A stretch of DNA of 63,364 nt, filler included, from Octopus bimaculoides (GCF_001194135.2; 6 parts of 6 records of this genome joined end to end with filler, not necessarily neighbours in it), one strand, 5' to 3'; positions 14,832 through 50,305 are shown, counted from the first letter of the whole stretch. The notes: generated by a model from the sequence alone, not told the origin. A program made the numbers and translations.

Positions 14832-15324
14832 ACTGAAGAGTGGATACAAGGGAGAATGGAGGAGGAGAGATGAGTGAGGTGGCATGAACACAGCTAGTTC
14901 CATAGAATGGAGGCCAACATAGTTGTGGTGGAAAAGGCATATAAAGAGGAGATGGTATGTCTGTGGGCCAGAGGCTGGTGTGTATCTGTGAGTGACTTTA
15001 TGTCAATTTGTTTGGTAATATCTTTCTGTTACAATATCATTGTTATTTTAGTTAATAGATTCTAGTCTTTGTGAGGTAATGAATATATAAATACAATTGT
15101 CACAGCTTGTTACTATTAGTTGCCACACAGGTGTAAACATCCTAGTATGATATTAATTTCTCAGTTGATAGATACTGTAGCATAAAAAATAAGATTCTAT
15201 GGAAGTAAATCTCAACTCAAGTTCAGTACCTGGTTTTGCTATTTTCTCTTTACTAATATATTTGGAAAAGGTATATGTGCCACAACATTACCCCAACTAC
15301 TGTAACTACTCAAGCTAATCAACC

Positions 15325-15560
15325 CATCATTCGTCATCATTTAACATTCACTTTTCCATGCTAGCATGGGTAAGATGGAATTTGTAGAAGTGGAGTTTTT
15401 TTTATATCTGGATGCCCTTCCTGTCACCAACCCTCATCTGTTTCCAAGCAAGGTAATATTTCCCCATGAGCAGACATACTTTCACAGAGTACTGGAAATG
15501 AAAGAAACTGCTTGCATGATAGTGATATTGGTTTACAGCTATTACATAAAGTCCAAGCTA
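15325..15560 (-). mobile_element. RTE-type 3' tail (divergent subfamily)
   Basis: catcatttaac...ttttccatgctagcatggg...ggatgcccttcctgtcaccaacc. Confidence 0.55.
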
Positions 15561-16872
15561 GGAGATAGTAACTCACCCACACACATACATATACTTATGT
15601 ACACACGCATACATATACTTATGTACACACACACACGATGTGCTTCTTTCAATTTCTGTGTACCAAATCCACTCACAGCGCTTTAGTTGGCCTGGAGCTA
15701 AGGCACTTATCTGATGTGCCATGCAAATGAACTGAACCTGAGATTATATCGGTGGGAGATTACAAAAGGCTAAAGTTTAAACTTTGTCTCCTTAGAGGAT
15801 AGGGTAACTAAGCATATATCCTTATGTAAGGAGTCACATAATTAAACACTAGTTGATTCCAGGTCCCAGCTTCAGACTAGAAATTATTTTGCTTTAGAAT
15901 TCATAGTTTGTGAATTAAATTATTTCCATATGATTCTTTAACTCTTTTGTTAACATATACAAATTAAAAGATATTGCCTTTGTTTCAATTAATTTTGAAG
16001 TAATGAAGGATTTAGTGAAATAACTATCATTATTAAGCTGGTGTTTGGAATATATGTGAAAGTGCTGGGAGCAATCTCAGGCAAATTGGTATCAAAAAGG
16101 CTAAACTTTGTATTTGATAAGAATAAAGACAATCAAGATTTAAGTTTGCTTTCTGACTTCCACATGGTTCTATAAATAGTACAACAGTTTTTTAATGAAT
16201 AGATTGGCACATTTTTATCCTATATTGTGTTAAATTTTATTTTCACGGGGATAAGAAGCTTATCTCTGTTTTTGTACATAATTTATATATTTTCATACAT
16301 TCATAGCTTTATATCAATATATATTTTAGTCAGAAGTGCAATAGTATTAAATATGTTTTCAGATTTTAATGCAAAATAATGAATTCCAAAGTTCAGATTT
16401 TAATTACTGATGAATATTAAATGAAGAACATTTGAAAAGACAAAAAGAAAGATTATCTTTCTGATATCTTGTAAATCATTCTAAATATATTAATATTCAG
16501 TTTTAATGCTTTATAATTCAATATGCTTTTAATATGTCCTTAATTTAATATGTAAAGGCATGTGGCCCAATGTTTATGGTGTTGGCCTGATGACTATTAG
16601 GTTGTGGCTTCAATTCTTGAACTGAGTGGATCATTGTATCCTTGAGTAAGATTTCAATTCACATATGTTCTGTACTCAGCTGAAAATGAGTTCCATTGGC
16701 ATCTGGAGGTTTGACTCTGTAATGGACTTGTGTCCTCTTTGGGGAGTGTTCTTGTATACTCAGTTTAAACACCTTGAAAATCTGTTTAAGCTCTGGTTTC
16801 ATGTACCTGTAGGCTGGAGGTAGGCCTTTTTTTAAAATTGAATATTTTTCTTTTTTTTTTTATTCTTGACAG

Positions 16873-16983
16873 AATCCAAACAAACGCATTTTCATACAAG
16901 GTTGTGTTCCCGTTTTGATGAATATCTTCAAAATGAATGCAGTCATAATTGGTTTGTCCATGTTAGTAATAGCACTATTGGAG
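16873..16983 (+). CDS. Tetraspanin coding exon: end of EC2 (GC) and start of TM4
   Basis: ttgacag acceptor and gtgagc donor; 111 nt, phase 0. Translates NPNKRIFIQGCVPVLMNIFKMNAVIIGLSMLVIALLE. Not in the ORF track in this frame. Confidence 0.9.
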
Positions 16984-17017
16984 GTGAGCTTCAATATTTT
17001 TGTTGTTCTCTACACGT

Positions 17018-17328
17018 CAGGAGTCCCCAACCACAGGGCCACAGAGTGGTGAATCATTTTGTACTGGGTCACAGAGAAAGAATAAATTTTAAAATTTCAT
17101 TTCCATTTTATTTACTATCATAGTCTGCAGGGTATTTTACTTTGAAAAATTACTACATCCATTTGTGTCTCTTTCTCCCATGTTTGTCTTAGTTTTTTTT
17201 TTGTGCACTGACAAACTAAGCCCAGAAACTAACTGTAACAATAATAAGAATGCATGATCCTATAATCTGTAGAAAAATTGACTTGCATGAAACCAGTCTG
17301 TGGTGCAAAAAAAGATTGGGAACTACTG
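17018..17328. mobile_element. hAT-like MITE, degenerate
   Basis: Ends CAGGAGTCCCCAACC ... GATTGGGAACTACTG resemble hAT termini; no clean 8-bp TSD remains. Confidence 0.5.
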
Positions 17329-17674
17329 CTCTGTACCATCCAATATATATTTAAATTGTATATGTTCAGCATTAGAGTCAATGCCAGCAGCAATGTTTTT
17401 TTTTTGTTCTGATCAGAAAGTCACCTTGGAGTCATCATAAATGCTTTAAAAAAATAGGTTTACTAGCTGTGATTATATATAGGAAACAAGTTTCACTATT
17501 TCCTAGAATGGTTGTTTTGAAAGTCAGAAAACCTGGGTATGGTATTGGTTTTGTAATCAGATGGATTATTCAGCACTAGCACTGATCCAATCTGAATCTC
17601 ACAACTTTTGGTGTAGCTATTTGGCTCAGACTTCATCACCATTTTATCTGGTGATATCCAATGGTGCCCTCCAT

Positions 17675-18825
17675 TATATGGGGGAAGTAAAAAATTATCT
17701 GCACTTTCATTAAAACTTTCTTCAGGCTGGGTGCACTGCCTTCAGTGTTCATGTGTTTGAAGGTGTTTGACCTTGACTCTTTCTGTTTTTTTCTTGTGTT
17801 ACAGAGTAAACATGGCCACTCCACTGGAAGTGTGCACCAAGGAAGAACAGAGATCATTGATTTAATTTCTGTAGTCTGAAGGTGTGTCAGGGGCTGAAAT
17901 TCATTGCAAGCTTGCAGTACAATACAGGGACAGTGCTCTACTGCATAGAAATGTGTATGAGTAGATTGAGATGTATGAAGAAGGAGCAGGACACCCACCA
18001 ACCCCCCACCACGGATATGAAGATTCAAAATGCTTGTGAGATGGTTTTGGTTAACTGACAAGTGATCATTGATGAGGTGGGATGTTCTCTGCAAATTAGT
18101 TGTGGTCCCACATACAAAATCATTCACAACAATATTCACTTCTGTAAAGTCTATGTGTGATGGGTGCCAAGAGAGCTTACCGAAGTGCGTAAGCAAAATT
18201 GTGTGGAGATCTGTCAGTGCTTACTTGACCACTACAATGATGAAGTTGAAGCCTTTTTGGAGTGAATAGCCATGGGAGATCAGAGCTGGGTCCATCACTT
18301 TGAGACAGAATCCAAAAGGCAGAGTATGGAGAAGAAACAGTATTGCTAGGACAAAAGAAATTCAAGCCTCAACCTTCCACAGAAAAAGTGATACTAACCA
18401 TTTAGGATGCAAAAGGGCCTACGCCTTTAGAAAAAGGGTCACCAGTGTAGGCTACAGTGAAATACTGGCCAACAAACTGAAACCAACAATTCACACCAAA
18501 TGACGAGGCCTATTGTTAAAGCAAGTGTTATTGTTGCAGGACAATCCATGCTCACATACAGCCACTGACACCATTGAATCCACTGAAAAATTGTATTTTT
18601 AGTTGCTGGAACACTTTGCATACAGTCCAGATCTCACCCCTTCCAAATATCACCTCTTTGGACTGCTCAAACATCCTTTATGAGGTTGTCAATTTGCTAC
18701 AGATGAAGAAGCACAGGAAGTGGTGCATAAATGACTGCATGACTAGTAAAAATACTTCTTCTCTGATGGAATAAGCAAATTTCTGGACCACTGGAAAAAG
18801 TGCATTGTAAAATAAGGAGTTTATG
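17675..18825 (+). pseudogene. Decayed mariner transposase
   Basis: A TIR-like start near 17675 and ATG at 17812 (MATPLEVCTKEEQR..GAEIH), then WVPREL, GDQSWVHH, DN, YSPDL and F..DEE motifs broken by stops and frameshifts. Confidence 0.85.
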
Positions 18826-19004
18826 CCAACCCCTGCTTTTGTTTTAATAAATTACAAAAGGGTGAAGGTTATCAATTTGTTATGGCCAAAGTGCAGGAAA
18901 AGGTGCATAAATAGCAGTGTGACCAGCTGAAAGCCTTCTCCAATAATAATGTAATTGTTAAATTCCTTTTGTTTTAATATATTACAGAAACAAGAGTGGA
19001 TATA

Positions 19005-19221
19005 CAAGGGATTGCTGAAAAGTTCCTGGCTTTGGGTAAAAGAAAATACAGGAGGATCAGTTAATTATGATTTTATTGAACATATACCCCTCTCAGATTC
19101 ACACAATTATTGCAGTGGTCCTTCAGTTTTTCTAAGCCCTATAAAAGAACTTGGAAGATTGAGCCTCCAAACAGGCCTGTCATAATACCCTTAAAGCCAG
19201 AAACTTTCTAGCACCCTCTTG
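19005..19221. mobile_element. Tc1/mariner-type MITE (217 bp) with TA duplication
   Basis: TA-CAAGGGATTGCTGAAAAGTTCCTGGCTTT ... AAAGCCAGAAACTTTCTAGCACCCTCTTG-TA; 23 of 29 TIR positions match. Confidence 0.78.
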
Positions 19222-19334
19222 TAAATTTTGACTTACCTTTGTAAATATGTGTGTGTGTGTGTGTGTGTGTGTGTACTGATTTTCATGTTAATTGTTTAGA
19301 TCTTCTGACTAAATATTTTGATCTTTATTTACAG

Positions 19335-19418
19335 ATTGTATCAGTTGTACTAGCCTATCTGACCATCAAAGGTATCTACGAGAAGAACTCAGAACAACCA
19401 TTTCCTTCTTCAATTTGA
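19335..19418 (+). CDS. Tetraspanin last coding exon: end of TM4, cytoplasmic tail, stop
   Basis: tttacag acceptor; translates IVSVVLAYLTIKGIYEKNSEQPFPSSI-TGA and completes TM4 in frame with the previous exon. Confidence 0.82.
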   Translation: MVSVVLAYLTIKGIYEKNSEQPFPSSI

Positions 19419-19596
19419 ATTACTGTATTACCTAAATGAAAAGGCCAGATATTAAAGAAAATCTATATTTCCTACATAACACTTCATTTAGAAAATAGAC
19501 TTCTCATTGAAAACAAAAATTCTTTTGCTATTTTCTTCTTAGATGCATTAAACTATAAATTTCCTTCATTTTCAAGTAGATTTGTTTGGAACTTAA

Positions 19597-19597
<1 letters not shown>

Positions 19598-19657
<60 letters not shown>

Positions 19658-19975
19658 AAGAGAGAGAGAGAAAGAGAGAGAGAGAGAGTGTGTGTATGTG
19701 TGTGCGTACATGCACATATTTGAATTTTTATACATATGTATGTATGTGTATATATAAAGGTATATATATGTATACATACATATATACATACATATATGTA
19801 TATATATATATATATAAACATATATATGTATATATATATGTATACATACATATATATATACATACATACATGTATGTATATACATGTATGTATATCTGTC
19901 TATACATACAAACACACACACACACATATATATGATGATGATATATATATATATATTTATATATGTAATATACAT
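19598..19975. repeat. Compound (TG)n(AG)n/(TA,CA)n microsatellite after the tetraspanin stop
   Basis: Direct reading. Confidence 0.9.
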
Positions 19976-20647
19976 CTGTAATATATATATCTGTAATATA
20001 ATACTTTGATTGCCTCGATAACTGATGAGATGCTGGGGTAGGTTTCTGCCCTGACATCTGAAACTCTTATTATGGCAACCGAATAATTGTTACATATATT
20101 ACAGATAAATTCTTCTATTTACATAATATTGAGGTCTCTTTCATTCTTTTGTTGNNNNNNNNNNNNNNNNNNNNNNNNNNNNNNNNNNNNNNNNNNNNNN
20201 NNNNNNNNNNNNNNNNNNNNNNNNNNNNNNNNNNNNNNNNNNNNNNNNNNNNNNNNNNNNNNNNNNNNNNNNNNNNNNNNNNNNNNNNNNNNNNNNNNNN
20301 NNNNNNNNNNNNNNNNNNNNNNNNNNNNNNNNNNNNNNNNNNNNNNNNNNNNNNNNNNNNNNNNNNNNNNNNNNNNNNNNNNNNNNNNNNNNNNNNNNNN
20401 NNNNNNNNNNNNNNNNNNNNNNNNNNNNNNNNNNNNNNNNNNNNNNNNNNNNNNNNNNNNNNNNNNNNNNNNNNNNNNNNNNNNNNNNNNNNNNNNNNNN
20501 NNNNNNNNNNNNNNNNNNNNNNNNNNNNNNNNNNNNNNNNNNNNNNNNNNNNNNNNNNNNNNNNNNNNNNNNNNNNNNNNNNNNNNNNNNNNNNNNNNNN
20601 NNNNNNNNNNNNNNNNNNNNNNNNNNNNNNNNNNNNNNNNNNNNNNC

Positions 20648-20696
20648 CAAAGCCTTGTGAGTGGATCTGGTAGACAGAAATTGAAAGAAGCTTGTC

Positions 20697-20753
<57 letters not shown>

Positions 20754-21003
20754 TATATACACCCATATGTATATATTTATGTAGGTGTGTGTTTGTCACC
20801 CCCACACACATACCATCGCTTGACAACTGTTGTTGGTGTGTTTGCATCCACATAACTTAGTAGTTCAGAAATAGAGGCCGATAGAATAAGCACTAGGCTT
20901 ACAAAGAATAAGTCCTGAGATCGAATTGTTCAACTAAAACCCGTTGAGGCAATGCTCCAGCTTGGCCACAGTCAAATGACTGAAATAAGTAAAATAATAA
21001 AAG
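20648..21003 (+). mobile_element. SINE family A, 5' part lost in gap
   Basis: ccaaagccttgtgagtggat...(TA)n...gcaatgctccagcttggccacagtcaaatgactgaaa. Confidence 0.75.
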
Positions 21004-21769
21004 AAAAGAATATATATATGTATGTATATATGTATGTATGTATGTATAAGATGAAGATGATTTATATAAGATGTATTAGTATAAGGAAAGTCTATGAAAG
21101 TTACTTTCTTTGTTTATGAAAAAAAATAAGGTTAAAATATGAAGTAATAAGAGAGGTATACAGATAAAGGTTCCAGATTTGTCTCAGTGGTTAAAGAATA
21201 TTTAAATATTGGGTTGTAAGAAAGATGTATTTTGATAACTTAAAAAATTATTTGACAGATTTGTATAGAAGTGTATATCAAAATAAATTAGCTTACTAAA
21301 TGCTCCTTTTATGCTTTTAGTGATATTCTTTTGAAAAATATTTTTAAAGGTAATGCAAAAAACAAATGGTATAGGATTTATTTTTGTGGGGCAATGACTT
21401 AAAATAATCTGATATATTTCCTTCTAACTATATGTTAAAACAGGATTATGTTAAATATTCCTTTTGTGTTTATAGTGATACTTAAAAAACATATTTTAGT
21501 ACAATTATAGGAAAAAAAACAAGAACGAATAAGTAGTGTAAGATTTATCTTGATGGGATGTAATGTTATGTAAGATATATTTTTGTACTATATAAATATG
21601 TATGTATATGAGTGTATATGTATATGAGTGTATATGTACATGTATGAATGTACTTATGTATGCATGTATATATATGAGTGTGTGTATGAATGAATCTATG
21701 TGTGTATATTCTCTTATATATGTTTAAATACATTTACCAAGGTTATTGTAAAATATATTCATTTTTGTG

Positions 21770-21770
<1 letters not shown>

Positions 21771-21845
<75 letters not shown>
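21771..21845. repeat. (AAT)n microsatellite
   Basis: Pure AAT run of about 25 units. Confidence 0.95.
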
Positions 21846-21846
<1 letters not shown>

Positions 21847-22574
21847 TGATACAAATTGTTATGGTAAAAATATATAGAGATCATTTTCAAAGATTTAATA
21901 GTTATTAATAGCATGAAATAGTTTTCAAGTTTCTCTATACTTGACCTTTTTGTTCCTCTACTTGATAACAAATTCTAAAGTTTCAGAGTTACACTTGTCT
22001 AGGAAGTGGCTTGACTTGAGACCTTGTGTTGAAACTGAACCAACTATATCACGGAAGAGCCATCTAAAAACACACACACAAAAATTTTTTTAATTCAATT
22101 TAAACTTGTCGTGGGGTGTCAAAATTGCATGAGTGTCCTGGTAACTGAAGCAATTCCAGTGCAATTACACACACACACTCACATATGTGCATACACATGC
22201 ACACACATGCACACACACACATGTATATACACACACATGCACACCCACATACACACATGCACACACACACACACATGGTGGACTCCTGTCATATATGACT
22301 GATAAGAGTTCTGCAATTTCTTGCTGAACAACCAGCATGGATGTTATGTTCAGAGTGATAAAATGTTTGTGCCACACATGAGCTCTCTGGCTCCATGAAA
22401 TCAATATTGCCTGCACAGTTGCTTGGTGTGCCACATGTCAGGTGTCTAAGTGACTGCAGAGCAACATGAAAGGAAGTGTTTTGCTCAAGAACACTATGTA
22501 CTGTCCGGTTTGGGAAATGAAATCATGATTACACAATTGTGTATGTGATGCCTTAAGAACCAGACCACACACGT

Positions 22575-28930: not shown

Positions 28931-29401
28931 CTCTTATTCTTCTACTCTAGGTATAAGGCCCGTTTTTTTTTTGGGGGGGGGGGGTCCAGTCGATTAGATC
29001 GACCACAGTACGCAACTGGTACTTAATTCATCGACACCGAAAAGATGAAAGTCAAAGTCGACCTCGGCGGAATTTGAACTCAGAACGTAACGGCAGACGA
29101 AATACTGATAAGCATTTCGCCCGGCACNNNNNNNNNNAGCATTGCGCCCGGCGTGCTAACGTTTCTTATTTCTTTACTGCCCACAAGGGGTTAAACATAG
29201 AGGTGACAAACGCGGACAGACAAAGGGATTAAGTCGATTACATCGACCCCAGTGTGTAACTAGTACTTAATTTATCGACTCCGAAAGGATGAAAAGCAAA
29301 GTCGACCTCGGTGGAATTTGAACTCAGAACGTAACGGCAGACGAAATACTGATAAGCATTTCGCCCGGCACGCTAACGTTTCTGCCAACTCGCCGCTTTA
29401 A
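28931..29401 (-). mobile_element. Tandem pair of family B SINEs bounded by a 13-bp target-site duplication
   Basis: ctcagattacact at 28918-28930 and 29402-29414; two B bodies with different 3' tails. Confidence 0.75.
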
Positions 29402-30819
29402 CTCAGATTACACTTTACCGTTTTTCAATGGGCAGGGACACATTGGATACTGTTATCTTAGACACGAAATTCCAAAGACAATAGCGTGCTAGTCATGGCT
29501 AGAATACCTTCATAAAATGTCTGCTCAATCAAGATAAGCAACAGGAATGAAGTTACGAGCCAAAACGGATAGCCGCTATGTTATATCAGATAACGCCAAA
29601 GTGGTCGATATCGATCCTTAGGGATCGATAGTACTGTCTTTCGGGTTGATGAATACCTCAAAGTCAAAAGTATATCAACTGAACGTTTGCTGTTGAAAGT
29701 CGATATAAGAATAAAAATACATAAAATATTAAATAAGATACAATTTGCTGCTATATATTTCGTATATAAATACATAATTAGTTGTTATTGTCTCTTTATA
29801 CTGTTTCCTGAAACAAGAATAAAGTAATAAAAATTTATCCTTAAGTGGAATCACGGAACAATGAAATACATATATTTCCCGTTTCCACACATAACTTTAT
29901 TTAGTTTTTCTTCTCTCATAAGCTCTATGTTTTGGGGGGTTTTTTGTTTATTTTATATCTTGGAGTATCCAATATGCAAATTATTTGTTTTTTTCATCAC
30001 TAGCATTGTTTCCTTGTAGCATTTTAGAATATTTTGGTTTGACCTTAACATTGTTTTCAATTATGTAACAAAAATCCGAGGCTGAATTTATCGGCCATGT
30101 CATTTTCCCTGCTACGTTGCCAAATTACAAAACGATTTAGTGCAACCAGTGAATATTCAACACACACGGCTATTCATAATCATGGCTTCCACTTTTAACT
30201 TCCACTTTAAAAATCGTTACAGATCGCTCATTGTAGACTCAAATTTAGGTCAATTTAAATGCGTAAAAATGTCAGACATATATGCTACCATATATAGCCA
30301 GAGAAAGCTATTGGACCATACGCTCCCTGGAATGATTCTTTTTCAAGAAAAATAGTTAACAACTCGAATATTCTAATACACAACTTGAATATCATATGTA
30401 CTTTGCAGCCAGATTGCCAACACACTTCAGAATGAAAGAGTAGTTGTCCATGGGCATACGCGCGCGCACACGCACACACAATACACACACACACTCACAC
30501 ACACACACTCGACCCGATAAAAACATGAATTTAAAAGGTGAGCTTTTAGTAAAAATAACTGCTTTCACTGGCTTTTCCAGTGTCATCTTCAATTTTCGTG
30601 ACATCTGTCTTGTGAACGCTTCTCTATATAAGTAGTAACGAGTCCATTTGATATTTGTTATCATACATTGAATACTGGTTGAGCATAGGCATGACGAAAT
30701 GCCACATAATCTATTCACAATATAAAGTATTCATAGCAACAAGTTTTGAACCTTGCTCTGCCATTGATATTTTCGTCTTTGCGGTTAAGTATTAAATTTC
30801 AGAAATAAAAAGCAAAACA

Positions 30820-31798: not shown

Positions 31799-32014
31799 AT
31801 TCTTTTCTACTCTAGGCACAAGGCCCGAAATTTTGAGGAGGGATCCAGTCGATTAGATCGACTCCAGTACGCAACTGGTACTTAATTTATCGACCCCGAA
31901 AGGATGAAAGGCAAAGTCGACCTCGGCGGAATTTGAACTCAGAACGTAAAGACAGACGAAATACCACTAAGCATTTCGCCCGGCGTGCTAACGTTTCTGC
32001 CATCTCGCCGCCTT
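31799..32014 (-). mobile_element. Full-length SINE family B
   Basis: Head aaggcggcgagatggcagaaacgttagc, B box, Deu-like centre and tail. Confidence 0.85.
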
Positions 32015-33569
32015 GTGACTGCAATACATTATACAATGTCGACTCCCACCCTTACTGCCATTTTACAGTCCTCATTTAAGTTCATTAAATTCACTGACCT
32101 TTTCCTTAGTTCTGCTGCCTCTGCAAAGCTTTTTCTTTTTAAATTTTCGTCCATCTTTTTGATAGCTCTGACCAGTTCCTCCTCTGAAGAGGACAATTCT
32201 GTTTCACTGGGGTCTGAACATACACGACTTCCACTCGCCATCCCTCAGTACCACCGAGAGACGGCACAACAACTCAAAACCCGCTGCAAACGCAGCACAA
32301 ACAAACAAGCTCGTACAACTCACAGAGACGGGATACCGCCAAGCAGTTCGCCCGGCGTGCTAACGTTTCTGCCATATCGCCGCCTTCATAAAATATATAT
32401 TGTATTATTAATGATCAACCGTCAGATATGAAAATTAGGCAATTCACTTCGGTGCTAGCTTAATTCGTAACTATTTATAACTGCTTTATACGATAGTTAT
32501 GGTTTTATGCTCTGTGTTGAAGAAGGAAGCCTGGTATGTTTTTCTCTGAGCTGCAATCAACAAATCACGAAACGGTCCCCCCCCCACACACACACATAAA
32601 AAAAAGCTTTGAAGGAATATGTTTCCATTCTTTTTATTTCTCCAACAACCAGGCAAATGTAGAGGACAATTTGGTACATGTTTCGTCTTTATCATAACTT
32701 GATCTCATGAGTATAACCGCAGATACTACCACAAATGTACCTAATCAGCACACAATTTGATTTATAGCTTATAAGGATTGCAAATAATATTCAAATTAGC
32801 TGTTAGCGACAGTAGCAGTATTGGTAACGATTAATATTAGTTCCCCCAACATAACTGTATGTGTTGTGGAGATCACCTTTAAACTGTTACTAACGCCCAG
32901 AGATACACTCGCGTGTCGACATGTGCTGACTATATCGGCTGACGAGACAGTCGTCTGTACCGATGGATAGCACAACCTTATCACGTGATTTCACTGTTTT
33001 CTGTGGATCTTCGCTCTGTAGATCAGCGTCGTACCTAATGCCAGAACAAAAATCAGTCGAACCGATATAGTATAATAATGGCCAAACAGCCTGTGATATC
33101 TCAAAAAGCCAGCAGGCCACGAATGAATTAGCTATTAGCAACGGCCTGTAGATAATTTTTAATTCTTTTACTTGTTTCAGTCATTGGACTTAACAGGTTT
33201 GGTCGAAGAAATCAACCTTAATACTTATTCTACGTTTGGTACTAAACCGCTAAATTACCTGACGTAACCAAACTTACGTCAAGAAGTGGAGAGACAAACA
33301 CGCGCGCGCGCGCAAACGATGGTGTTCCCTACTAAATTCAGTTCACAAAGCGTTAGTTGGTCTGGTTTGCAGTGGAAGACACTTGTCCAAAGTACCGCGC
33401 AGGGATACATTTTAACCACACAGCTATATCTGCAAGGGAAATTAACAGCAATTGGTCAATAGCATACATTTGCATAAGTTAAGAGTCAAAAGGCGAGACA
33501 TGAGTTTTACAATATTTGCAATATGTGCTATTTTGCGGCAAGTATATCACGTGAACGAAGCATTTCAAG

Positions 33570-34340: not shown

Positions 34341-34850
34341 TGTTTAAATTGATATCTGTAGAAAAAACACGAGAAAGGAGGAAATTCTTGAAGGTTAATG
34401 TTCTGGAGGGAAAAAATGTAGGGGAATAAATTATGTGAGCCTTTCTTCGTCCGGTTTCTTCAGGAATAGAAGTTCATTACCTATGACCCTTTATTTTTCA
34501 GGACCTCCGCGACTTGTGAGAGGAAAGGAGAAAGGTATCTTCAGACCAGAGACCTCATCCGAATGCTTGCAGCAGAGTCAGCACTGCAAAAGGCAACCAA
34601 AGACCAAGTGCGAGTGTTAAACCAGACTAAGCCTGGTTGATACGTCTCAATAGAAGCGATGCGAAGAGGAGAGATAGCAGGGGGACCAAGTGCTAATCTA
34701 CGTATGCTGTGGTTGAGAGGTCGCTGTATGTTGCTTTGCTCGGAGGCCTATAACGCTGTAAAGACGGTCCTGTTGTAGAGGAAGCTCGGTTGGAGTTGGT
34801 GTACAACTAGTTAGTTCCGAGGAGTAGATGTAATAGTAACTGAATAAGAT

Positions 34851-34856
<6 letters not shown>

Positions 34857-34933
<77 letters not shown>
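34857..34933. repeat. (AG)n microsatellite
   Basis: Direct reading. Confidence 0.95.
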
Positions 34934-34936
<3 letters not shown>

Positions 34937-39900: not shown

Positions 39901-40881
39901 AAGAAAGGATTCCAAGTCATTAATACACTCTTTAGTTCCATCACTATCATCTGTTGAAAGCTATTTGTCATCATTTCGTGCCTCGTGATTGCATTGCGGA
40001 AGAAATACCGCATTCGCTACCGCTATACAATAAACGGTTATATTTAGACCTGAGCGGCGGGGTTGGGAGAAATTAAAATTATTGATTATTGCTATATGTA
40101 CATTATGAACCATTGTCGACATGATACCGCAGATGTTCTGCTAATATTAGTTATTACTTTTAAACCAAGCCACTCCAACCTTCAGCCATTATTTCTAGGT
40201 TGGCCTGGTACAGTATTCAAAATTACTGCGTGTGAGAATGACTGATAAGAGAGACGTGACATGCCGCATTTTTTTATTTATTTAATTTTTTTTTTTGATA
40301 AATGAATATCAGTTTCAGAAGCCTTGATAAGTTTTTTTTATTTCTAAATGATGACATACAATAATAAAAAATATATTGTAATATTTAGTTCTTGTTGATT
40401 GGTCTCGCCTTATGTATAATATCCCAAATAATCTCAAAGAAAAAATGGCAGATGTTTTTTTTTTTTTTTTTAATAAAATGTAATCTTTTGCCTGCATTTG
40501 TGTAATAAATGCATTGAAGTGCTGAAATTATGTCAGTTAATAAGAATCTAGGAGTAAACGTATTTATATTTAGACGAAGCCTGGCTTTTTCTGATGGCGT
40601 TGTTGCTGTTGACAATGATTTTTAAAGAAGCTATATTAACCAACAACCAGATGAGGGAAGGGGGGCGGCATCATTAAGAAATTCGGTCACAACCTAGTCG
40701 CCACGAATTCGATCCCACTGCAGTGCTGTATAATGTTCTCTGCAATATCTTCGTATTGACTAACCGTTGAAAAGATTGAATTTCGGCGGTTTGAGAAAAG
40801 GAAAAGAAACTGCGCAGTCACCCTACTCCCAAGAAATTGACGTTGTACATTTAGTATTGTGTACATTGGCTTTGTCGGTTT

Positions 40882-41071
40882 GACGAGCTGGAAGAATCGT
40901 TAGCACGCCGGACAAAGTGCTTAGTGGCATTTCTTCGGGCTTTAGTTTGCGAGTTCGAATTCCGCCGAGGTCGATTTTTTTCCTTTTCGGATTGATAAAG
41001 GAAGTACCAGTTGATTACATCAACCTCATATCTTCGAAAATTTCAGACCTTGTACCTATAGTAGAAAGAAT
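40882..41071 (+). mobile_element. Degenerate SINE family B in tubulin intron 1
   Basis: gacgagctggaagaatcgttagcacgccgg...gagttcgaattccgccgaggtcga...gtacctatagtagaaagaat. Confidence 0.7.
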
Positions 41072-41309: not shown

Positions 41310-41675
<366 letters not shown>

Positions 41676-42469
41676 TAATTCACNNNNNNNNNNNNNNNNN
41701 NNNNNNNNNNNNNNNNNNNNNNNNNNNNNNNNNNNNNNNNNNNNNNNNNNNNNNNNNNNNNNNNNNNNNNNNNNNNNNNNNNNNNNNNNNNNNNNNNNNN
41801 NNNNNNNNNNNNNNNNNNNNNNNNNNNNNNNNNNNNNNNNNNNNNNNNNNNNNNNNNNNNNNNNNNNNNNNNNNNNNNNNNNNNNNNNNNNNNNNNNNNN
41901 NNNNNNNNNNNNNNNNNNNNNNNNNNNNNNNNNNNNNNNNNNNNNNNNNNNNNNNNNNNNNNNNNNNNNNNNNNNNNNNNNNNNNNNNNNNNNNNNNNNN
42001 NNNNNNNNNNNNNNNNNNNNNNNNNNNNNNNNNNNNNNNNNNNNNNNNNNNNNNNNNNNNNNNNNNNNNNNNNNNNNNNNNNNNNNNNNNNNNNNNNNNN
42101 NNNNNNNNNNNNNNNNNNNNNNNNNNNNNNNNNNNNNNNNNNNNNNNNNNNNNNNNNNNNNNNNNNNNNNNNNNNNNNNNNNNNNNNNNNNNNNNNNNNN
42201 NNNNNNNNNNNNNNNNNNNNNNNNNNNNNNNNNNNNNNNNNNNNNNNNNNNNNNNNNNNNNNNNNNNNNNNNNNNNNNNNNNNNNNNNNNNNNNNNNNNN
42301 NNNNNNNNNNNNNNNNNNNNNNNNNNNNNNNNNNNNNNNNNNNNNNNNNNNNNNNNNNNNNNNNNNNNNNNNNNNNNNNNNNNNNNNNNNNNNNNNNNNN
42401 NNNNNNNNNNNNNNNNNNNNNNNNNNNNNNNNNNNNNNNNNNNNNNNNNNNNNNNNNNNNNNNNNNNNN

Positions 42470-42804
<335 letters not shown>

Positions 42805-42839
42805 ATAATTTAAACACTGGTACAACAGAGTTAGCTGAA

Positions 42840-42845: not shown

Positions 42846-44530
42846 AGCAATCATATCAGCTACAAAGTTCTTTTTGTTTTACTTTATTTCTTTAACGGTT
42901 CTAACACTAGCTAGAAATTGAACTGTAAGGAAAAGTAGAAACCAATGACTTCACATTTTAAAGCAATTCAACTCTGGACATTTTTCTTTTTTTACAACTT
43001 CATTAATGATACTAAATTGCATAAAAAGTAAATAAGAATATTAACTAGTGAGAATCTTTAAAATCTGTTTTGTATATATCTACAAAAGCTATGGAAATGT
43101 TACAAGGGGTAGATGATGGTAATAATTGTAGCTATGTATTCAAAATACTGGCAACTAGGAGCAGTTGAGCTACCTGGTAATCGTGCAGTCTGTTGGACAT
43201 TAGTTAAATATCCATCAAATTTCTCGAGAAAGAAGCATTTATTAATGTAATCCTTGACATAATGTCGTCTGAAAGATGGGATGGTCAAGTCTGCAGTTCA
43301 CTAGAAGCATTTTTAACATGACAAGGGACGTTATTTCCGAGTTCTAGCATGTTCCTTCCCTTTTAATTTTGATATACAAATTATTTATGCCTAGTTGTAT
43401 ATACATAGACTTTTTTTTTCTGTCTTTTCTTCACAATGACATTGGTAAATACATCCCAGCTTGCCAGCATGGAGAAAGAATGCTTATTGTATACAAAATT
43501 TTGGTTATTTGGAGAAACAAAAACTATCAAAAGGGGAGATAATTTCAATTCAGTAAGCTACATTTACAGGATTTAGGGGAAAAATATAATCTTTGTTTAG
43601 TGTACAACTAAGCACGTAATTTGGTCTTATTGGTTAGCATACAGTAAATTGATGTTGGCATAAAGAGCTTACAAATGAAATTTGCCTTATGGGGAGATAA
43701 TTTTACTTGTAACTATTTAAAGGCATGGTTGCATGATTAAATTTGTTTGAAATCAAGTTTAGCCTTTGGCCGAACTGCATTGCACAATTGTCTTAGTTCG
43801 CCAATACCTTGTAAATGAAATTTAAAAGATGAAACTTGTTCAGTTGATATATTATCTGTGACAAGCTGGTCCTTTACAAACTAAAGAGGTTCTCTGAAGT
43901 GACTTAGATGTCTTGTATCTTTAAAAATGCAGTGACAGGCCTGTTGATGTAACCAGCTCCATTATATTAATAGGCTGGCTGCTAATATATGTACCCTTAA
44001 ATCTCAGCAATTAACAAAACTGGGTTTTTTTTTATTTGACAGTCTTGTATAAATTTTCCAAATCACTGATTTAAAAGGAAAAAACAATTAAGCTTGAGAT
44101 ATTGCCAGGTTTGGCTGAACTATATTTAATGTTTTCCCAAACGTTGATCTGGTTGAATTCCAGACCAACTTGATGGAATTAGTCTGACATTTCCAAAAGT
44201 TAATTGTGTCACAATTATATCTATTAAGGAAAGCCTCAGCAAATGAGAGGATGTGTGAAGACTAGAGGAACGAAGTTGGTATGCTTTGCTAGATGTGCAA
44301 TGTTAGTGTGTATGTTCAACAGTGCTGGTGTATTGAGAGAAAAGTTCAGCATAAGAATATGTAGTGTGCACTAGTTAGGTCACATGGTGCAGATCGATGA
44401 AAGTTGTAGGAGACCCAGGAAGATCACAATGACTGAAATATTGGTGCATTGCTGTACTCAAGATCTGCCCACCACAATTGATATCCTAAAGCGAAGGTGC
44501 CACATAGGCACTCAATAATATACTCTGTAT

Positions 44531-45497
44531 AGGGCTTTCCTATAAGGTGTTATCCACCCCTGATTGGAATTCTCCCGTATGACATGTACGCATGCTCAGT
44601 GACTTACTTTAACAGTTGCAATCAGCTGAATGCACATTGCCAGTGACATAATTACCCACACTCTGTGGTCAGGATTCTTTTTTTGGTTTGATGTCGGTAT
44701 CGAAGGGATTACCNNNNNNNNNNNNNNNNNNNNNNNNNNNNNNNNNNNNNNNNNNNNNNNNNNNNNNNNNNNNNNNNNNNNNNNNNNNNNNNNNNNNNNN
44801 NNNNNNNNNNNNNNNNNNNNNNNNNNNNNNNNNNNNNNNNNNNNNNNNNNNNNNNNNNNNNNNNNNNNNNNNNNNNNNNNNNNNNNNNNNNNNNNNNNNN
44901 NNNNNNNNNNNNNNNNNNNNNNNNNNNNNNNNNNNNNNNNNNNNNNNNNNNNNNNNNNNNNNNNNNNNNNNNNNNNNNNNNNNNNNNNNNNNNNNNNNNN
45001 NNNNNNNNNNNNNNNNNNNNNNNNNNNNNNNNNNNNNNNNNNNNNNNNNNNNNNNNNNNNNNNNNNNNNNNNNNNNNNNNNNNNNNNNNNNNNNNNNNNN
45101 NNNNNNNNNNNNNNNNNNNNNNNNNNNNNNNNNNNNNNNNNNNNNNNNNNNNNNNNGGCAATACTTCACCGAGAGGAGATATAAGCTTCTGCTTGTTCCT
45201 GTCTGAAGTATCGTCCGATGAATTTACTTTGTTGACATTCTTCATCGACAGAATTTTTATCCCTTTCAACCTTTCAGTCAAGTCCGCCTTTCTTCCAGTA
45301 ACATACTGTCCATATAATCTTAAATATTTCTTTAACTCAGGCACAGTAAGTACTTCGATAGCTGAATCATCAAGCTGCTTTATATCCATGATAAGACGTA
45401 AAGCAATAACAATGGCGTGGGTTAGCCTCCGGAAGTTTAATTATCTACATGGAGTGCCGCCTAGCCAAGGGAGATAACCTACTTATAGGAAAGCCCT
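44531..45497 (-). mobile_element. TIR DNA transposon carrying a SAP-domain ORF (ISL2EU/PHIS-like candidate)
   Basis: AT-AGGGCTTTCCTATAAG ... CTTATAGGAAAGCCCT-AT (16-bp perfect TIR); the centre (44714-45156) is N. Confidence 0.72.
45157..45389 (-). CDS. SAP-domain protein N-terminus (3'-partial, runs into N gap)
   Basis: MDIKQLDDSAIEVLTVPELKKYLRLYGQYVTGRKADLTERLKGIK... fits the SAP pattern LTVxELKxxLxxxGxxxxGxKxxLxxRL; open to the gap. Confidence 0.7.
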
Positions 45498-46050
45498 ATA
45501 GTGGTTGGTGTTAGGATTGACATCCACTTGTAAAAAGCACTTGGACCTGGTGTGGGCCCTGTCAATCCATCTAATCTTTGCCAGGATGGAAAACTGGCAT
45601 TGAATGATAAAATCAAGTTGCATGTTACTTGTGACCTGCACAGTGCTGCCATTGCAATTATCAAGATGAATTATCACCCTTGGACTTTGTGGTACACTAA
45701 GAAGCAAATTTATGGGGTGACTAGCAGCAAGTTGTCCCTAACATTCTGTGGGCCTGTGATTAAAAGCAGTCCTTGCATTGATATAACTTTTAACGGATAA
45801 TGCAGGACTACATTATCTGATGTCATACTTATTTAAAATGATAATGTGTTTTGAGAGACTTGTCTCATATTTCTAACATGTTTCATAAGAGGGTTAGTTG
45901 GTGATATTAATGGTTGTTAAGGAGTTAGTTTTGCCATTAAATGCAATTCTGAAATAAGAAACTAACATATCAAATAGTACATTTTATTGTTTAACAAATA
46001 TATTACACATTTTAGGATTAATATTTCTGCCAAACTGGAATTTCAGCTAC

Positions 46051-47597: not shown

Positions 47598-50305
47598 CTT
47601 TTACTCTCTTTTACTTGTTTCAGTCATTTGACTGCGGCCATGCTGGAGCACCGCCTTTTTAGTCAAGCAAATCGACCCCAGGACTTATTCTTTTGGAAGC
47701 ACAGTACTTATTCTATCGGTCCCTTTTACCGAACCGCTAAGTTACAGGGACATAAACACACCAGCATCGGTTGTCAAGCAATGTTGGGGGGACAAACACA
47801 CACACATATATATATACATATATACAACGGGCTTCTTTCAGTTTCCGTCTACCAAATTCACTCACAAGGCTTTGGCCGGCCCGAGGCTATAGTAGAAGAC
47901 ATGTGGTTGGCAAGCAAGCTACTTACCACACAGCCACTCCTACACCTGTTTTTATATAAATTAATTTGTTTTGGTGGTAAATAAAAAAAATTATTTGGAT
48001 TGACAAAAACGTCTTGCAGTGTTTAGGTATGTTTAGGTATGGAGATTTTGGTTGCTGTTAGCTACTGGCTGGGCATCCACGTAGAGACAACCTCAATCGT
48101 TGCTGCCATAGTCACGATTTCAAATTTTTGCCACAAGGGCAGCTTAGGGGAGGAGAATAAGTTGATTACATGGACCTCAGTGTGTAACTGGTACATATTT
48201 AATCGACCCCAAAAGGATGAAAGGCAAAGTCAACCTCAGCAGAATTTGAACTCAGAATGTAGCAACAGAAGAAATACCATTAAGTATTTTGTCCAGTGCG
48301 CTACCGATTCTGCCAGCTTGCCATCCTATGTACCCTTCATAATAATGGCAATGGAAGCTGCCTATCATAATCACACAATGTTAGAGATCAAGCCTACTTA
48401 CAGTATGTAAAGTACTGGGGTCGATGTAATTGACTATCCCTTTCCCCAAAATTTCAGGCCTTGTGCCTACAGTAGAAAGAATTATTACTTATATTACTCA
48501 GGTGAAGGGATGACAAAATTGTTAGAGCATCAGTGGGATCAACTAACCCCTCCCCTCAAAACTGTTGGCCTTGTGCCAAACTCCGAAATCATTGACTATT
48601 ATCAAAGCGGTGAGCTGGCAGAATCGCTAGGGAGTCGACAAAACTACTTAGCAGAGTTATTTTACAGAATGCAGCGAGCTGGCAGAAACGTTAGCACACC
48701 GGGTGAAATGCTTGGCAGTATTTTGTCTGCCATTACGTTCTGAGTTCAAATTCCACCGAGGTCGACTTTGCCTTTCGTCCTTTCGGGGTCGATAAATTAA
48801 GTAGCAGTTACGTACTGGGGTCGATCTAATCGACTTAATCCCTTTGTCCTTTTTTTGTCCCCTCTTGTGGGCAATAAAGAAATAAGAATTATTTTATAGT
48901 TCTTTATATTCTGAGTTCACATCCTGCAGAGGCCAGTTTCACCTTACATCTCTCTGAGGTCAATAATATAAATTGTCAGTCAAGTACTGGGATTGATGAT
49001 ATCAATTAATCCTCCTCTACTCAAAATTGCTGGCCTTGTGCCATATTTAGAAATTAGGGTTAATAATATTTATTTCTTTATTGCCCAGAAGGGGCTAAAC
49101 ATAGAGGGGACAGACAAAGGGATTAAGTCGATTACATCGACCTCAGTGCTTAACTGGTACTTGTTTAATCGACCCTGAAAGGATGAAAGGCATAGTCGAC
49201 CTCGGCGGAATTTGAACTAAGAATGTAAACGGCAGACAAAATACCACTAAGCATTTCGCCCGGCGTGCTGACGATTCTACCAGCTCGCCGCCCTAGGGTT
49301 AAAAATATTAATACCGGTAGTAAGGCGGCGAGCTGGCAGAATTGTTAACACTACGGGCAAAATGCTTAGCAATATTTATTTCGTCTGTATTTACGTTGTG
49401 AGTTCAAATTCTGCTGAGGTTGACTTTTTCCTTTCATCCTTTCGGGGTCAATAAAATAGGTACCAGTTGAGTACTGAGGTCGAGGTAATCGACTTGCCCC
49501 CTTCCCCNNNNNNNNNNNNNNNNNNNNNNNNNNNNNNNNNNNNNNNNNNNNNNNNNNNNNNNNNNNNNNNNNNNNNNNNNNNNNNNNNNNNNNNNNNNNN
49601 NNNNNNNNNNNNNNNNNNNNNNNNNNNNNNNNNNNNNNNNNNNNNNNNNNNNNNNNNNNNNNNNNNNNNNNNNNNNNNNNNNNNNNNNNNNNNNNNNNNN
49701 NNNNNNNNNNNNNNNNNNNNNNNNNNNNNNNNNNNNNNNNNNNNNNNNNNNNNNNNNNNNNNNNNNNNNNNNNNNNNNNNNNNNNNNNNNNNNNNNNNNN
49801 NNNNNNNNNNNNNNNNNNNNNNNNNNNNNNNNNNNNNNNNNNNNNNNNNNNNNNNNNNNNNNNNNNNNNNNNNNNNNGTATATATACATATATACGACGA
49901 GCTTCTTTCAATTTCCATCTACCAAATCCATTCACAAGGCTTTGGTCGGCCCGAGGCTATAGTAGCAGACACTTGCCCAAAGTGCCACGCAGTGGGACTG
50001 AACCAGGAACCATGTGGTTCGTTAGCAAGCTACTATTATTTCAATAAATTTCGCCATTAATGGCGTTACATAGAGGGGACAGACAAAGGCAGACAGACAT
50101 AAAGTAGCTGCGGGCTGGACATGGACATTAATGAGATGAGGGTGATAAGAATGAAACAAATAATAAGAGAGGCACCAGCGCCCGCCGACTGATAACCCCT
50201 CGAAAACATTGTTCTTTCCCCCCCCCCTTTTAAAATTACAATTTTTACACAATTTCAATACATTAACAAAGCAAGCTACTTACCACACAGCCACTCCTAC
50301 GCCTA
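47598..50305. mobile_element. Dense SINE cluster (families A and B, both orientations)
   Basis: Family A at ~47598-47948(-), 49890-50030(-) and 50270-50305(-). Family B at ~48140-48325(-), 48405-48485(+), 48672-48886(+), 49070-49293(-) and 49321-49506(+). Confidence 0.8.

What the first reader, a model, noticed from the sequence alone, without database searches (positions are those of the whole stretch)
44531..45497. TIR-bounded element with an AT duplication encoding a SAP-domain protein
Seen: a perfect 16-bp TIR (AGGGCTTTCCTATAAG) with AT on both flanks, and an ORF from 45389 open to the gap with a clear SAP fold pattern. Both subtermini carry promoter-like motifs (CCGGAAGT ETS site at 45429; GATTGG and GTACGCATGCTCAG near 44560-44600). 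Removing the element rejoins the flanks into a decayed copy of the RTE-tail repeat (tactctgt-AT-agtggttggtgttagga; compare 1795-1830), so it is a nested insertion. Knowledge, from memory: ISL2EU (PHIS group) elements have RR..YY ends, 2-bp TSDs and a second ORF with a YqaJ-type exonuclease; Zisupton elements also encode SAP. Inference: a probably non-autonomous two-gene DNA transposon, possibly an uncatalogued cephalopod family. The 443-N gap may hide much more sequence.
Basis: partly seen in the sequence, partly recalled or inferred. Interest (0 to 1): 0.75.

Follow-up and report, generated by a model that had tools for sequence, protein, structure and literature searches.

The report
Broken ISL2EU jumping gene in octopus
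This is a decayed, internally deleted copy of an ISL2EU-type cut-and-paste DNA transposon, almost certainly in Octopus bimaculoides. It keeps both ends and the first third of the family's accessory gene, and it is an ordinary repeat rather than a new kind of element.

Summary
A perfect inverted repeat lies at 44531-44546 and 45482-45497. AT lies outside each arm. An inward-reading ORF starts at 45389 and has a SAP domain above Pfam's threshold.

The ISL2EU call is supported, but "two-gene" is not. The SAP ORF is itself the N-terminus of the YqaJ accessory gene (ORF2, SAP-SWIM-YqaJ). Full-length mollusc relatives carry this gene convergent with a transposase gene (THAP, HTH_Tnp_4 and DDE_Tnp_4 together in Mya arenaria and Sinanodonta woodiana), between AT-flanked 16-bp terminal inverted repeats (TIRs). 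The Sinanodonta TIR matches the octopus TIR at 14 of 16 positions.

The window copy keeps the 5' end and ORF2 up to the first CxC of the SWIM finger. After the donor of the conserved intron it jumps to the last ~68 nt of the transposase-side end. The YqaJ domain and the transposase are absent.

At least 23 O. bimaculoides gene models derive from this family. Those that reach the end of the exon stop at the same "CNC*".

The gap could not be closed because the reads tool was shut. Collinearity predicts about 207 nt rather than 443. No octopus autonomous partner was found. It is a new member of a known kind, of low interest.

The parts
44529..44530 (.). AT dinucleotide outside the left TIR, presumed one copy of the 2-bp target-site duplication.
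   Evidence: All six Mya copies carry AT outside the left TIR and five of six outside the right, with unrelated DNA beyond. The literature gives AT as the ISL2EU target-site duplication.
44531..44546 (+). Left TIR AGGGCTTTCCTATAAG, at the transposase-side end of the ancestral element.
   Evidence: It matches the Sinanodonta TIR AGGGCATTCCAATAAG at 14 of 16 positions.
44547..44598 (+). Subterminal remnant of the transposase-side end, which is the transposase promoter region in relatives. It holds GATTGG (44562-44567) and GCATGC (44590-44595).
   Evidence: Alignment A2. It aligns with the last ~70-100 nt of the Sinanodonta and Mya elements, with 59% identity to Sinanodonta over 96 nt.
44599..44607 (-). 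GTAAGTCAC on the minus strand. This is the donor site of the conserved ORF2 intron, followed immediately by the internal-deletion breakpoint at about 44598/44599.
   Evidence: The exon end aligns with Sinanodonta, Pinctada, Gigantopelta and Mya (...TGY xCAGCTGG|GTAAGT).
44609..44713 (-). Tail of the ORF2 exon remnant. It encodes VIPSIPTSNQKKNPDHRVWVIMS, then after a 7-nt deletion TGNVHSADCNC, then the stop TAA (44609-44611). The deletion lies at about 44644/44645 and shifts the frame relative to family members. The remnant ends after the first CxC of the SWIM finger.
44714..45156 (.). Assembly gap of 443 N (nominal length). Expected content is the middle of the same exon, matching Sinanodonta ORF2 residues 78-146, about 207 nt.
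   Evidence: It was not closed because the reads tool was shut.
45157..45389 (-). Head of the ORF2 remnant, 77 codons from ATG 45389. The SAP domain covers residues 13-42, which is 45264-45353.
   Evidence: It is 47% identical over 72 aa to residues 4-75 of Sinanodonta ORF2 protein P0037, and 85-100% identical to O. bimaculoides gene models.
45390..45481 (-). 5' leader and promoter of ORF2, with an ETS-like ACTTCCGG on the minus strand (45429-45436).
   Evidence: CTTCCGG is invariant in alignment A1 of five mollusc species. Its position is given.
45482..45497 (-). Right TIR, at the ORF2-side end.
45498..45499 (.). AT dinucleotide outside the right TIR, presumed the second copy of the target-site duplication.

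Best explanation
The feature is a non-autonomous, internally deleted and partly decayed copy of an ISL2EU-group DNA transposon (PHIS, or Harbinger-like, superfamily). The host is Octopus bimaculoides or a very close relative.

**Ancestral element (shown in relatives).** The layout is AT | 16-bp TIR | short ETS-containing promoter | ORF2 (SAP-SWIM-YqaJ exonuclease, with one conserved intron inside the SWIM finger). ORF2 is convergent with ORF1, the transposase gene (THAP-HTH-DDE in Mya and Sinanodonta). Then come a short promoter, a 16-bp TIR and AT.

**Octopus copy (shown).** It keeps about 108 nt of the ORF2-side end and most or all of ORF2's first exon. It also keeps 9 nt of the intron, beginning with its GTAAGT donor. 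It then jumps to the last ~68 nt of the transposase-side end. About 3.8 kb (Sinanodonta) to 5.4 kb (Mya) is missing, by comparison with those relatives.

**Mechanism (inferred).** Such a copy can move only if a THAP-HTH-DDE transposase from an autonomous relative binds its TIRs. The transposase would excise it and reinsert it at an AT, with a 2-nt staggered cut that repair turns into the AT duplication.

**Coding capacity (inferred).** The remaining ORF has no exonuclease domain and only half a SWIM finger. It stops after about 93-100 aa in gap-free family members. This copy also carries a 7-nt frameshifting deletion. It is therefore most likely an inert repeat about 1.7 kb downstream of an alpha-tubulin gene.
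For: 1. TIR, AT flanks and SAP ORF are confirmed.
2. The 77-aa ORF finds full-length mollusc proteins with SAP, SWIM and YqaJ domains. An example is Sinanodonta P0037: 565 aa, YqaJ E = 3e-18, 47% identity over the ORF. The DNA left of the gap encodes the continuation of the same protein, up to ADCNC at the start of the SWIM finger.
3. In Mya arenaria the homologous gene lies in a 6,484-bp element. Seven copies were seen, on six loci, about 99.9% identical to each other. In each copy it is convergent with a transposase gene, THAP-HTH_Tnp_4-DDE_Tnp_4 in five gene models and HTH/DDE only in two. My own Pfam scan of one Mya copy gave THAP 36 bits and DDE_Tnp_4 144 bits. The pairing recurs in Sinanodonta (THAP, HTH, DDE), Pinctada (HTH, DDE only) and Gigantopelta, where the neighbouring gene is cut by the locus end and shows THAP and HTH only.
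4. Those elements end in AT plus a 16-bp TIR. Mya has TGTCCTTTCCGATAAC, Sinanodonta AGGGCATTCCAATAAG (14 of 16 identical to octopus), Gigantopelta AGCCTTGTTCGATAAC and Pinctada AGCTAAATACGAAAAC. Flanking DNA beyond the AT is unrelated. Two tandem Mya copies are separated by a single AT, which fits AT as target rather than element sequence.
5. The subterminal DNA aligns across species. The first 49 nt are 36/49 identical between octopus and Sinanodonta, and CTTCCGG is invariant.
6. The stop and the GTAAGT sit exactly at the conserved intron position of the relatives.
7. At least 23 O. bimaculoides gene models share this ORF. Sixteen were read as sequences and a further six are listed only as cluster members. 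Twelve of the 16 end in the same CNC*.
8. Published definition of ISL2EU: AT duplication, a DDE+HTH+THAP transposase, a second ORF with YqaJ, and TIRs of 6-259 bp (PMC4482050; PMC4122938; PMC9179366).
Against: - No empty site was available, so the AT duplication of this particular insertion is inferred, not shown.
- The two halves are joined across an unread gap inside a repeat with more than 20 copies. They could belong to two different copies.
- No octopus or other cephalopod autonomous partner appeared among the listed protein hits, neither a THAP-DDE transposase nor a full-length YqaJ ORF2.
- The TIR starts AG, whereas the literature says ISL2EU TIRs usually start GG.
- DNA of other octopus copies could not be fetched. 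Copy number, deletion junction and flanks of the family rest on protein models only.
Confidence: 0.9

Rival explanations
1. The 'element' is a scaffolding artefact. The left arm and the right arm come from two different copies of the same repeat family, joined across the gap. The true local insertion would then be different, for example a solo end or a longer copy.
For: The gap lies inside a repeat with at least 23 copies. The nominal 443 N is about twice the ~207 nt predicted by collinearity.
Against: The two arms have the order, orientation and complementary content expected of a single copy: head and tail of the same exon, and opposite ends of the element. The TIRs are identical at 16 of 16 positions. 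The identity of the family would not change in any case.
Confidence: 0.08
2. The gap hides much more sequence, so this is a full autonomous two-gene element with the YqaJ domain and the transposase.
For: The gap length is only an estimate.
Against: Both gap edges fall within ORF2's first exon, at positions matching Sinanodonta residues 77 and 147. The deletion junction, running from the intron donor straight into the transposase-side terminus, is visible outside the gap at about 44598/44599. A transposase could therefore sit in the gap only as an unrelated nested insertion.
Confidence: 0.02
3. It is a single-copy host gene for a SAP-domain protein, and the inverted repeat is coincidental.
For: UniProt names the paralogues 'SAP domain-containing protein'.
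Against: There are at least 23 paralogous gene models at 85-100% identity. A perfect 19-nt inverted repeat is present. The termini are homologous to the TIRs of mollusc transposons. The ORF is truncated and frameshifted.
Confidence: 0.01
4. It belongs to another DNA-transposon superfamily: Tc1/mariner with a TA duplication, PIF/Harbinger proper, Spy, or Zisupton.
For: The flank TATA...TATA is palindromic, so TA or TATA duplications fit this one copy. From memory, Zisupton proteins have SWIM-like fingers.
Against: In the six Mya loci only AT...AT fits as a direct repeat. Relatives carry THAP-HTH-DDE_Tnp_4 plus YqaJ. They lack a Myb/SANT ORF and a TWA duplication, which define Harbinger. They are not TSD-less AAA|TTT inserters, which define Spy. 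From memory, Zisupton makes 8-bp duplications.
Confidence: 0.02
5. The truncated SAP protein is functional. It would be a KP-like regulator, a DNA-binding fragment that competes with full-length ORF2 or transposase at the ends. Alternatively it would be an exapted exon or promoter for host genes.
For: Many copies keep the first ~40-60 codons almost unchanged, with an ETS-type promoter motif conserved across molluscs. One O. bimaculoides model (P0024) splices the transposon exons to a Kazal-domain host region.
Against: Similarity among copies is as expected for a moderately young repeat family. No expression data could be obtained. This copy is frameshifted. Gene models over repeats are often artefacts.
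Confidence: 0.05

Closest known systems
ISL2EU group of the PHIS (PIF/Harbinger-ISL2EU-Spy) superfamily, for example the oyster families ISL2EU-1_CGig / ISL2EU-8_CGi (PMC4482050)
   Same: AT flanks. Short TIRs. The ORF is homologous to the YqaJ-bearing second ORF. Full-length mollusc relatives pair it with a THAP-HTH-DDE_Tnp_4 transposase (Mya, Sinanodonta). Element size in relatives is about 4.6-6.5 kb, against about 5 kb for the oyster families.
   Different: The octopus copy has lost the YqaJ domain and the transposase. Its TIR begins AG rather than the usual GG. The insertion-site context is T|AT|A rather than the reported preferred A|AT|T. The SAP and SWIM parts of ORF2 are not spelled out in the papers I read.
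Autonomous SAP-SWIM-YqaJ / THAP-DDE elements of Sinanodonta woodiana (L007) and Mya arenaria (L001-L006)
   Same: TIR identical at 14 of 16 (Sinanodonta) and 11 of 16 (Mya) positions. The same subterminal CTTCCGG and GCATGC motifs. The same ORF2 start about 85-108 nt from the end. The same intron position.
   Different: Protein identity is only about 47%. Synonymous sites are as diverged as between bivalves and gastropods, so the relationship is ancient and not a recent transfer. These relatives are complete, and in Mya about 99.9% identical between copies, which means recently active.
Internal-deletion derivatives of cut-and-paste transposons, such as the KP elements of the Drosophila P element and the Ds elements of Ac (from general knowledge)
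   Same: Both termini are kept, the interior is lost, movement depends on transposase supplied in trans, and the derivative can outnumber its parent.
   Different: No repressor activity or mobility is shown here. What is retained is a fragment of the accessory gene, not of the transposase.
PIF/Harbinger proper
   Same: Two-gene layout and a DDE_Tnp_4-type transposase in the relatives.
   Different: Harbinger has a 3-bp TWA duplication and a Myb/SANT second ORF. Neither is seen here.

Membership tests
ISL2EU (PHIS superfamily) | A 2-bp target-site duplication, typically AT. | tested here: met
   AT lies outside both TIRs in the window. In six Mya loci the left flank is AT in all six and the right in five, with otherwise unrelated flanks. 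Sinanodonta, Pinctada and Gigantopelta also have AT flanks. That AT is duplicated target rather than element sequence was not shown for the octopus copy, because no empty site was available. It is supported by the single AT between tandem Mya copies and by the literature.
ISL2EU (PHIS superfamily) | Terminal inverted repeats of 6-259 bp, usually starting GG. | tested here: met
   A perfect 16-bp TIR is present. It starts AGGG, so the first base departs from the usual GG. Relatives also start AG or TG.
ISL2EU (PHIS superfamily) | [quoted passage not shown] | tested here: inconclusive
   The window ORF is homologous to the N-terminal ~180 residues of SAP-SWIM-YqaJ proteins. The YqaJ domain itself is deleted from this copy, and it is absent from all 16 octopus gene models read.
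ISL2EU (PHIS superfamily) | A transposase with DDE (DDE_Tnp_4), HTH and THAP domains. | tested here: not met
   It is absent from the window copy, because the deletion junction at about 44598/44599 removes it. It is present next to the homologous ORF2 in Mya and Sinanodonta with all three domains, in Pinctada with HTH and DDE only, and in Gigantopelta (gene cut by the locus end) with THAP and HTH only. This is the expected state of a non-autonomous member. No octopus transposase was found.
ISL2EU (PHIS superfamily) | Multiple dispersed copies in the genome. | tested here: met
   At least 23 distinct O. bimaculoides UniProt gene models carry the ORF. DNA of those copies was not retrievable.
PIF/Harbinger proper | A 3-bp TWA duplication and a Myb/SANT second ORF. 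| tested here: not met
   The flanks are AT, and the second ORF of the relatives is SAP-SWIM-YqaJ.
Zisupton | An 8-bp duplication, long TIRs and a Zisupton-type transposase (recalled from memory). | tested here: not met
   No 8-bp direct repeat flanks the TIRs. Relatives carry a DDE_Tnp_4 transposase. The family definition is from memory and was not checked in a paper.

The most novel reading that the evidence does not exclude
The octopus family is an amplified 'SAP-only' derivative. Its short protein, the SAP DNA-binding domain without nuclease, would be expressed from a conserved ETS-type terminal promoter. It would act as a KP-like modulator of ISL2EU transposition, or it would have been recruited as a promoter and first exon by host genes, as in the P0024 model with its Kazal-domain fusion.
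Probability: 0.05. Interest if true: 0.5.

Novelty: new member of a known kind. Interest (0 to 1): 0.2.

Why it matters
The main value is for annotation. About two dozen "SAP domain-containing protein" entries for O. bimaculoides in UniProt are fragments of one transposon family, not host genes.

Two smaller points follow:
- The ISL2EU accessory protein of molluscs has a defined SAP - SWIM - YqaJ architecture, with one conserved intron inside the SWIM finger.
- The outermost ~50-100 nt of each end are conserved at the DNA level across bivalves, gastropods and an octopus. This includes the TIR, a CTTCCGG motif and, in part, a GCATGC motif. The conservation is at least as strong as in the coding DNA: 60-73% against about 56%. 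This marks likely transposase-binding and promoter sequences, which could guide a reconstitution assay for a superfamily whose ORF2 function is still unknown.

Tried and rejected
- **Fetching DNA of other octopus copies.** The look-up of encoding contigs on P0001 and P0002 found nothing on record. A metagenome scan with the TIR plus subterminal pattern gave 0 hits. Copy-level duplication statistics, the family consensus and the deletion junction in other copies are therefore missing.
- **Paralogous empty site or second copy of the flanks inside the piece.** None was found.
- **Octopus autonomous partner.** Two protein searches were run, one with Sinanodonta ORF2 and one with its transposase exon. 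Neither listed a named cephalopod protein among the best 120. Many hits are unnamed, so this is absence of evidence only.
- **Recent horizontal transfer between bivalves and octopus.** This is not supported. Third-position identity at conserved residues is 23/55 for octopus against Sinanodonta, the same range as between bivalves and gastropods.
- **Haliotis locus L008.** No clear TIR and no called transposase neighbour were found. It was left aside.
- **Literature.** No paper holds both 'ISL2EU' and 'octopus'. One broad search was uninformative.
- **Rfam and tRNA scans of the piece.** Nothing was found.

Full report

Yes. The repeat finder reports a 100% complementary 19-nt inverted pair, TATAGGGCTTTCCTATAAG, at 44528-44546 and 45482-45500. 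The 16-mer occurs exactly twice in the window. Only 0.30 matches are expected even when three mismatches are allowed.

On the minus strand an ATG at 45389 opens a frame that runs 77 codons to the gap edge. It passes Pfam's SAP threshold with 26.2 bits against a cut-off of 23.9, over residues 13-42.

**2. The gap.**

Indirect evidence:
- With the nominal 443 N the two sides are out of frame. The nominal frame from 45389 meets a TAA at 44709-44711.
- The right edge encodes ...LISPLGEVL.
- The left edge encodes VIPSIPTSNQKKNPDHRVWVIMS... on the same strand.
- In full-length relatives these are residues ~74-77 and ~147 onwards of one uninterrupted exon.

The sides therefore have the order and orientation of a single copy. 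Collinearity with the closest relative predicts about 69 codons, or about 207 nt, between them.

Gap-free octopus paralogues show that the family ORF is not continuous across this region anyway. P0001-P0003 run 16 codons beyond GEVL and then stop (...PDLKIFVSCRISQIMT*). Gene models that include the downstream part skip this stretch as an "intron".

A mis-join of two copies of the same repeat cannot be excluded.

**3. What the ORF is.**

The word-indexed search with the 77 residues found 12 clusters. All are O. bimaculoides UniProt "SAP domain-containing" models of 63-133 aa at 85-100% identity. Cluster look-ups raise this to at least 23 distinct entries. The host is therefore O. bimaculoides or a very close relative, and the sequence is a repeat. 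Sixteen of these models were read as sequences. Twelve of them end ...VIPSIPTSNQKKNPDHRVWVIMSNVTGNVHSADCNC*.

The exhaustive representative search found proteins that match the whole query and are much longer. P0037 from the freshwater mussel Sinanodonta woodiana is 565 aa and has three domains:
- SAP at residues 13-40;
- a SWIM finger at 159-197, which is weak at 17.5 bits;
- a YqaJ exonuclease domain at 339-498, E = 3e-18.

It is 47% identical to the window ORF over 72 residues. The alignment places the octopus pieces on residues 1 to ~180 of these proteins. They end at the first CxC of the SWIM CxCxnCxH motif. Relative to the family, the window copy has lost 7 nt (AAATGTC, at about 44644/44645), which shifts the frame.

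**4. What the full-length relatives are.**

P0037-like proteins are widespread and multi-copy in bivalves and gastropods.

*Mya arenaria.* The gene for P0141 (581 aa) was retrieved at six loci, one of which holds two copies. In each of the seven copies it is convergent with a transposase gene. Five gene models, 484-521 aa, hit THAP, HTH_Tnp_4 and DDE_Tnp_4, and two shorter 462-aa models hit HTH and DDE only. I confirmed all three domains on the exons of one copy: THAP 36 bits, HTH_Tnp_4 57 bits, DDE_Tnp_4 144 bits. The copies are about 99.9% identical over 6,484 bp. They end AT|TGTCCTTTCCGATAAC ... GTTATCGGAAAGGACA|AT, and the DNA beyond is unrelated. In five of the six loci both flanks read AT. 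L005 has TG on the right.

*Other species.*
- Sinanodonta: same pairing, with THAP, HTH and DDE; ends AT|AGGGCATTCCAATAAG.
- Pinctada: the neighbouring gene shows HTH and DDE only; ends AT|AGCTAAATACGAAAAC.
- Gigantopelta: the neighbouring gene is cut by the locus end and shows THAP and HTH only; ends AT|AGCCTTGTTCGATAAC.

This is the published definition of ISL2EU:
- AT duplications;
- a DDE+HTH+THAP transposase;
- a second ORF with a YqaJ exonuclease domain;
- TIRs of 6-259 bp.

These come from PMC4482050, PMC4122938 and PMC9179366. Oyster ISL2EU families of about 5 kb with YqaJ ORF2s are already catalogued.

**5. The termini link the octopus copy to that family.**

The octopus TIR AGGGCTTTCCTATAAG matches the Sinanodonta TIR at 14 of 16 positions. 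These positions were fixed independently by each element's own inverted repeat. The first 49 nt of the ORF2-side ends are 36/49 identical without gaps.

In the five-species alignment of ORF2-side ends, three features are invariant:
- the AT;
- several TIR positions;
- a CTTCCGG motif about 30-45 nt upstream of the ATG.

On the other end the octopus sequence aligns with the transposase-side termini. GCATGC is shared with Sinanodonta and Mya. GATTGG is not conserved.

**6. Anatomy of the deletion.**

ORF2 of Sinanodonta, Pinctada and Gigantopelta has one intron, directly after CxCxAG. Mya has that intron plus one more.

The octopus minus strand reads ...GATTGCAACTGT TAAA GTAAGTCAC TGAGCATGCGTAC.... 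The relatives read ...TGY xCAGCTGG|GTAAGT.... From this:
- the exon end and the intron donor are retained (GTAAGT at 44607-44602);
- a stop (TAA, 44611-44609) sits just before the donor;
- 3 nt after the donor hexamer the sequence switches to the last ~68 nt of the transposase-side end.

The breakpoint is at about 44598/44599. The deletion removed the rest of the SWIM finger, the YqaJ domain, the intergenic region and the whole transposase gene. The size of the loss is estimated as each relative's element length minus the predicted ~730-nt octopus element, which gives about 3.8 kb for Sinanodonta and about 5.4 kb for Mya once its extra intron is allowed for. The expected intact length of the octopus element is about 730 nt (341 + ~207 + 183).

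**7. How it works.**

*Shown:*
- the structure described above;
- the copy number;
- the homology of the ends and of the ORF to autonomous ISL2EU elements in other molluscs.

*Inferred from what is known of PHIS and IS5-type DDE transposases:* mobilisation in trans by a THAP-HTH-DDE transposase that recognises the TIRs and subterminal sites, followed by cut-and-paste with a 2-nt stagger at AT.

*Unknown:* the role of SAP-SWIM-YqaJ. By analogy with Harbinger's Myb-like ORF2 it may tether or import the transposase. Its nuclease may process ends.

The octopus remnant can encode at most a ~93-100-aa SAP peptide. In this copy the downstream part is also frameshifted. I consider it inert.

**8. Points for and against novelty.**

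No octopus autonomous partner was seen, but the listings are truncated and partly unnamed. Synonymous-site identity between octopus and Sinanodonta is 23/55. This is no higher than between bivalves and gastropods. The similarity therefore reflects old common descent with constraint on the termini, not recent transfer.

No paper in the library links ISL2EU to octopus, and the 2015 PHIS survey does not include octopus. Repbase and Dfam could not be consulted.

**9. Verdict.**

The element is a non-autonomous internal-deletion derivative, not a two-gene element, and it is unlikely to hide much in the gap. It is a new member of a known kind, at most, and of low interest. Its practical consequence is that a set of octopus "SAP domain proteins" should be re-labelled as transposon fragments.

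Noticed in passing
window 41370-41600 (+) and 42472-42801 (+): Two exons of an alpha-tubulin gene. The first begins [28 protein letters not shown].... The second runs ...[22 protein letters not shown]... to ...EEEGDEY*. An assembly gap (41684-42469) separates them. The transposon lies about 1.7 kb downstream of the stop codon. The long minus-strand 'ORF' at 41680-42825 is just antisense to this exon plus N.
   Followed up: partly
window 28980-29414, 31839-32017, 32326-32387, 40877-41030, 48152-48327, 48653-48848, 49113-49503: An interspersed repeat of about 180-200 nt occurs in at least 8 copies, in both orientations, at 64-90% identity. Typical sequence...GGCGAGCTGGCAGAA.CGTTAGCAC.CCGGGCGAAATGCTTAG...GAGTTCAAATTCCGCCGAGGTCGAC.... 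It looks like a SINE, but neither ARAGORN nor Rfam recognises a tRNA or other RNA in it.
   Followed up: partly
L002 (Mya arenaria CP111013.1) about 9914-22559: Two complete copies of the 6.5-kb ISL2EU element lie head to tail, separated by a single shared AT (...GGACA AT TGTCC...). Possible causes are insertion of one copy into the AT duplication of the other, or a tandem or assembly duplication. The single AT fits AT being target sequence rather than part of the element.
   Followed up: partly
P0024 (UniProt A0A0L8I7X3, O. bimaculoides; not in the window): A 278-aa gene model joins the transposon's SAP exon and the 'KQQLRSGIFYHDRHVHSIEYHDVSESCSHCIVRCL' part to a Kazal_2 domain and a hydrophobic, acidic tail. 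This is either exonisation or promoter capture of a host gene, or an annotation artefact.
   Followed up: no
L001-L006 (Mya arenaria): The element copies are about 99.9% identical to each other over 6.5 kb, with both gene models called in every copy (two transposase models lack THAP). This suggests very recent or ongoing ISL2EU activity in the soft-shell clam. L001 carries an extra ~260-bp insertion at about 10702.
   Followed up: no
L008 (Haliotis cracherodii) 5977-5990 and 11339-11352: The ORF2 homologue has no called transposase neighbour and no clear TIR. A 14-nt ACTTCCGCCGAGTA motif (ETS-like) is repeated in inverted orientation about 5.4 kb apart. It may mark the two promoters of a degraded or differently bounded element.
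   Followed up: no
window 34847-34935: A long (AG)n microsatellite.
   Followed up: no
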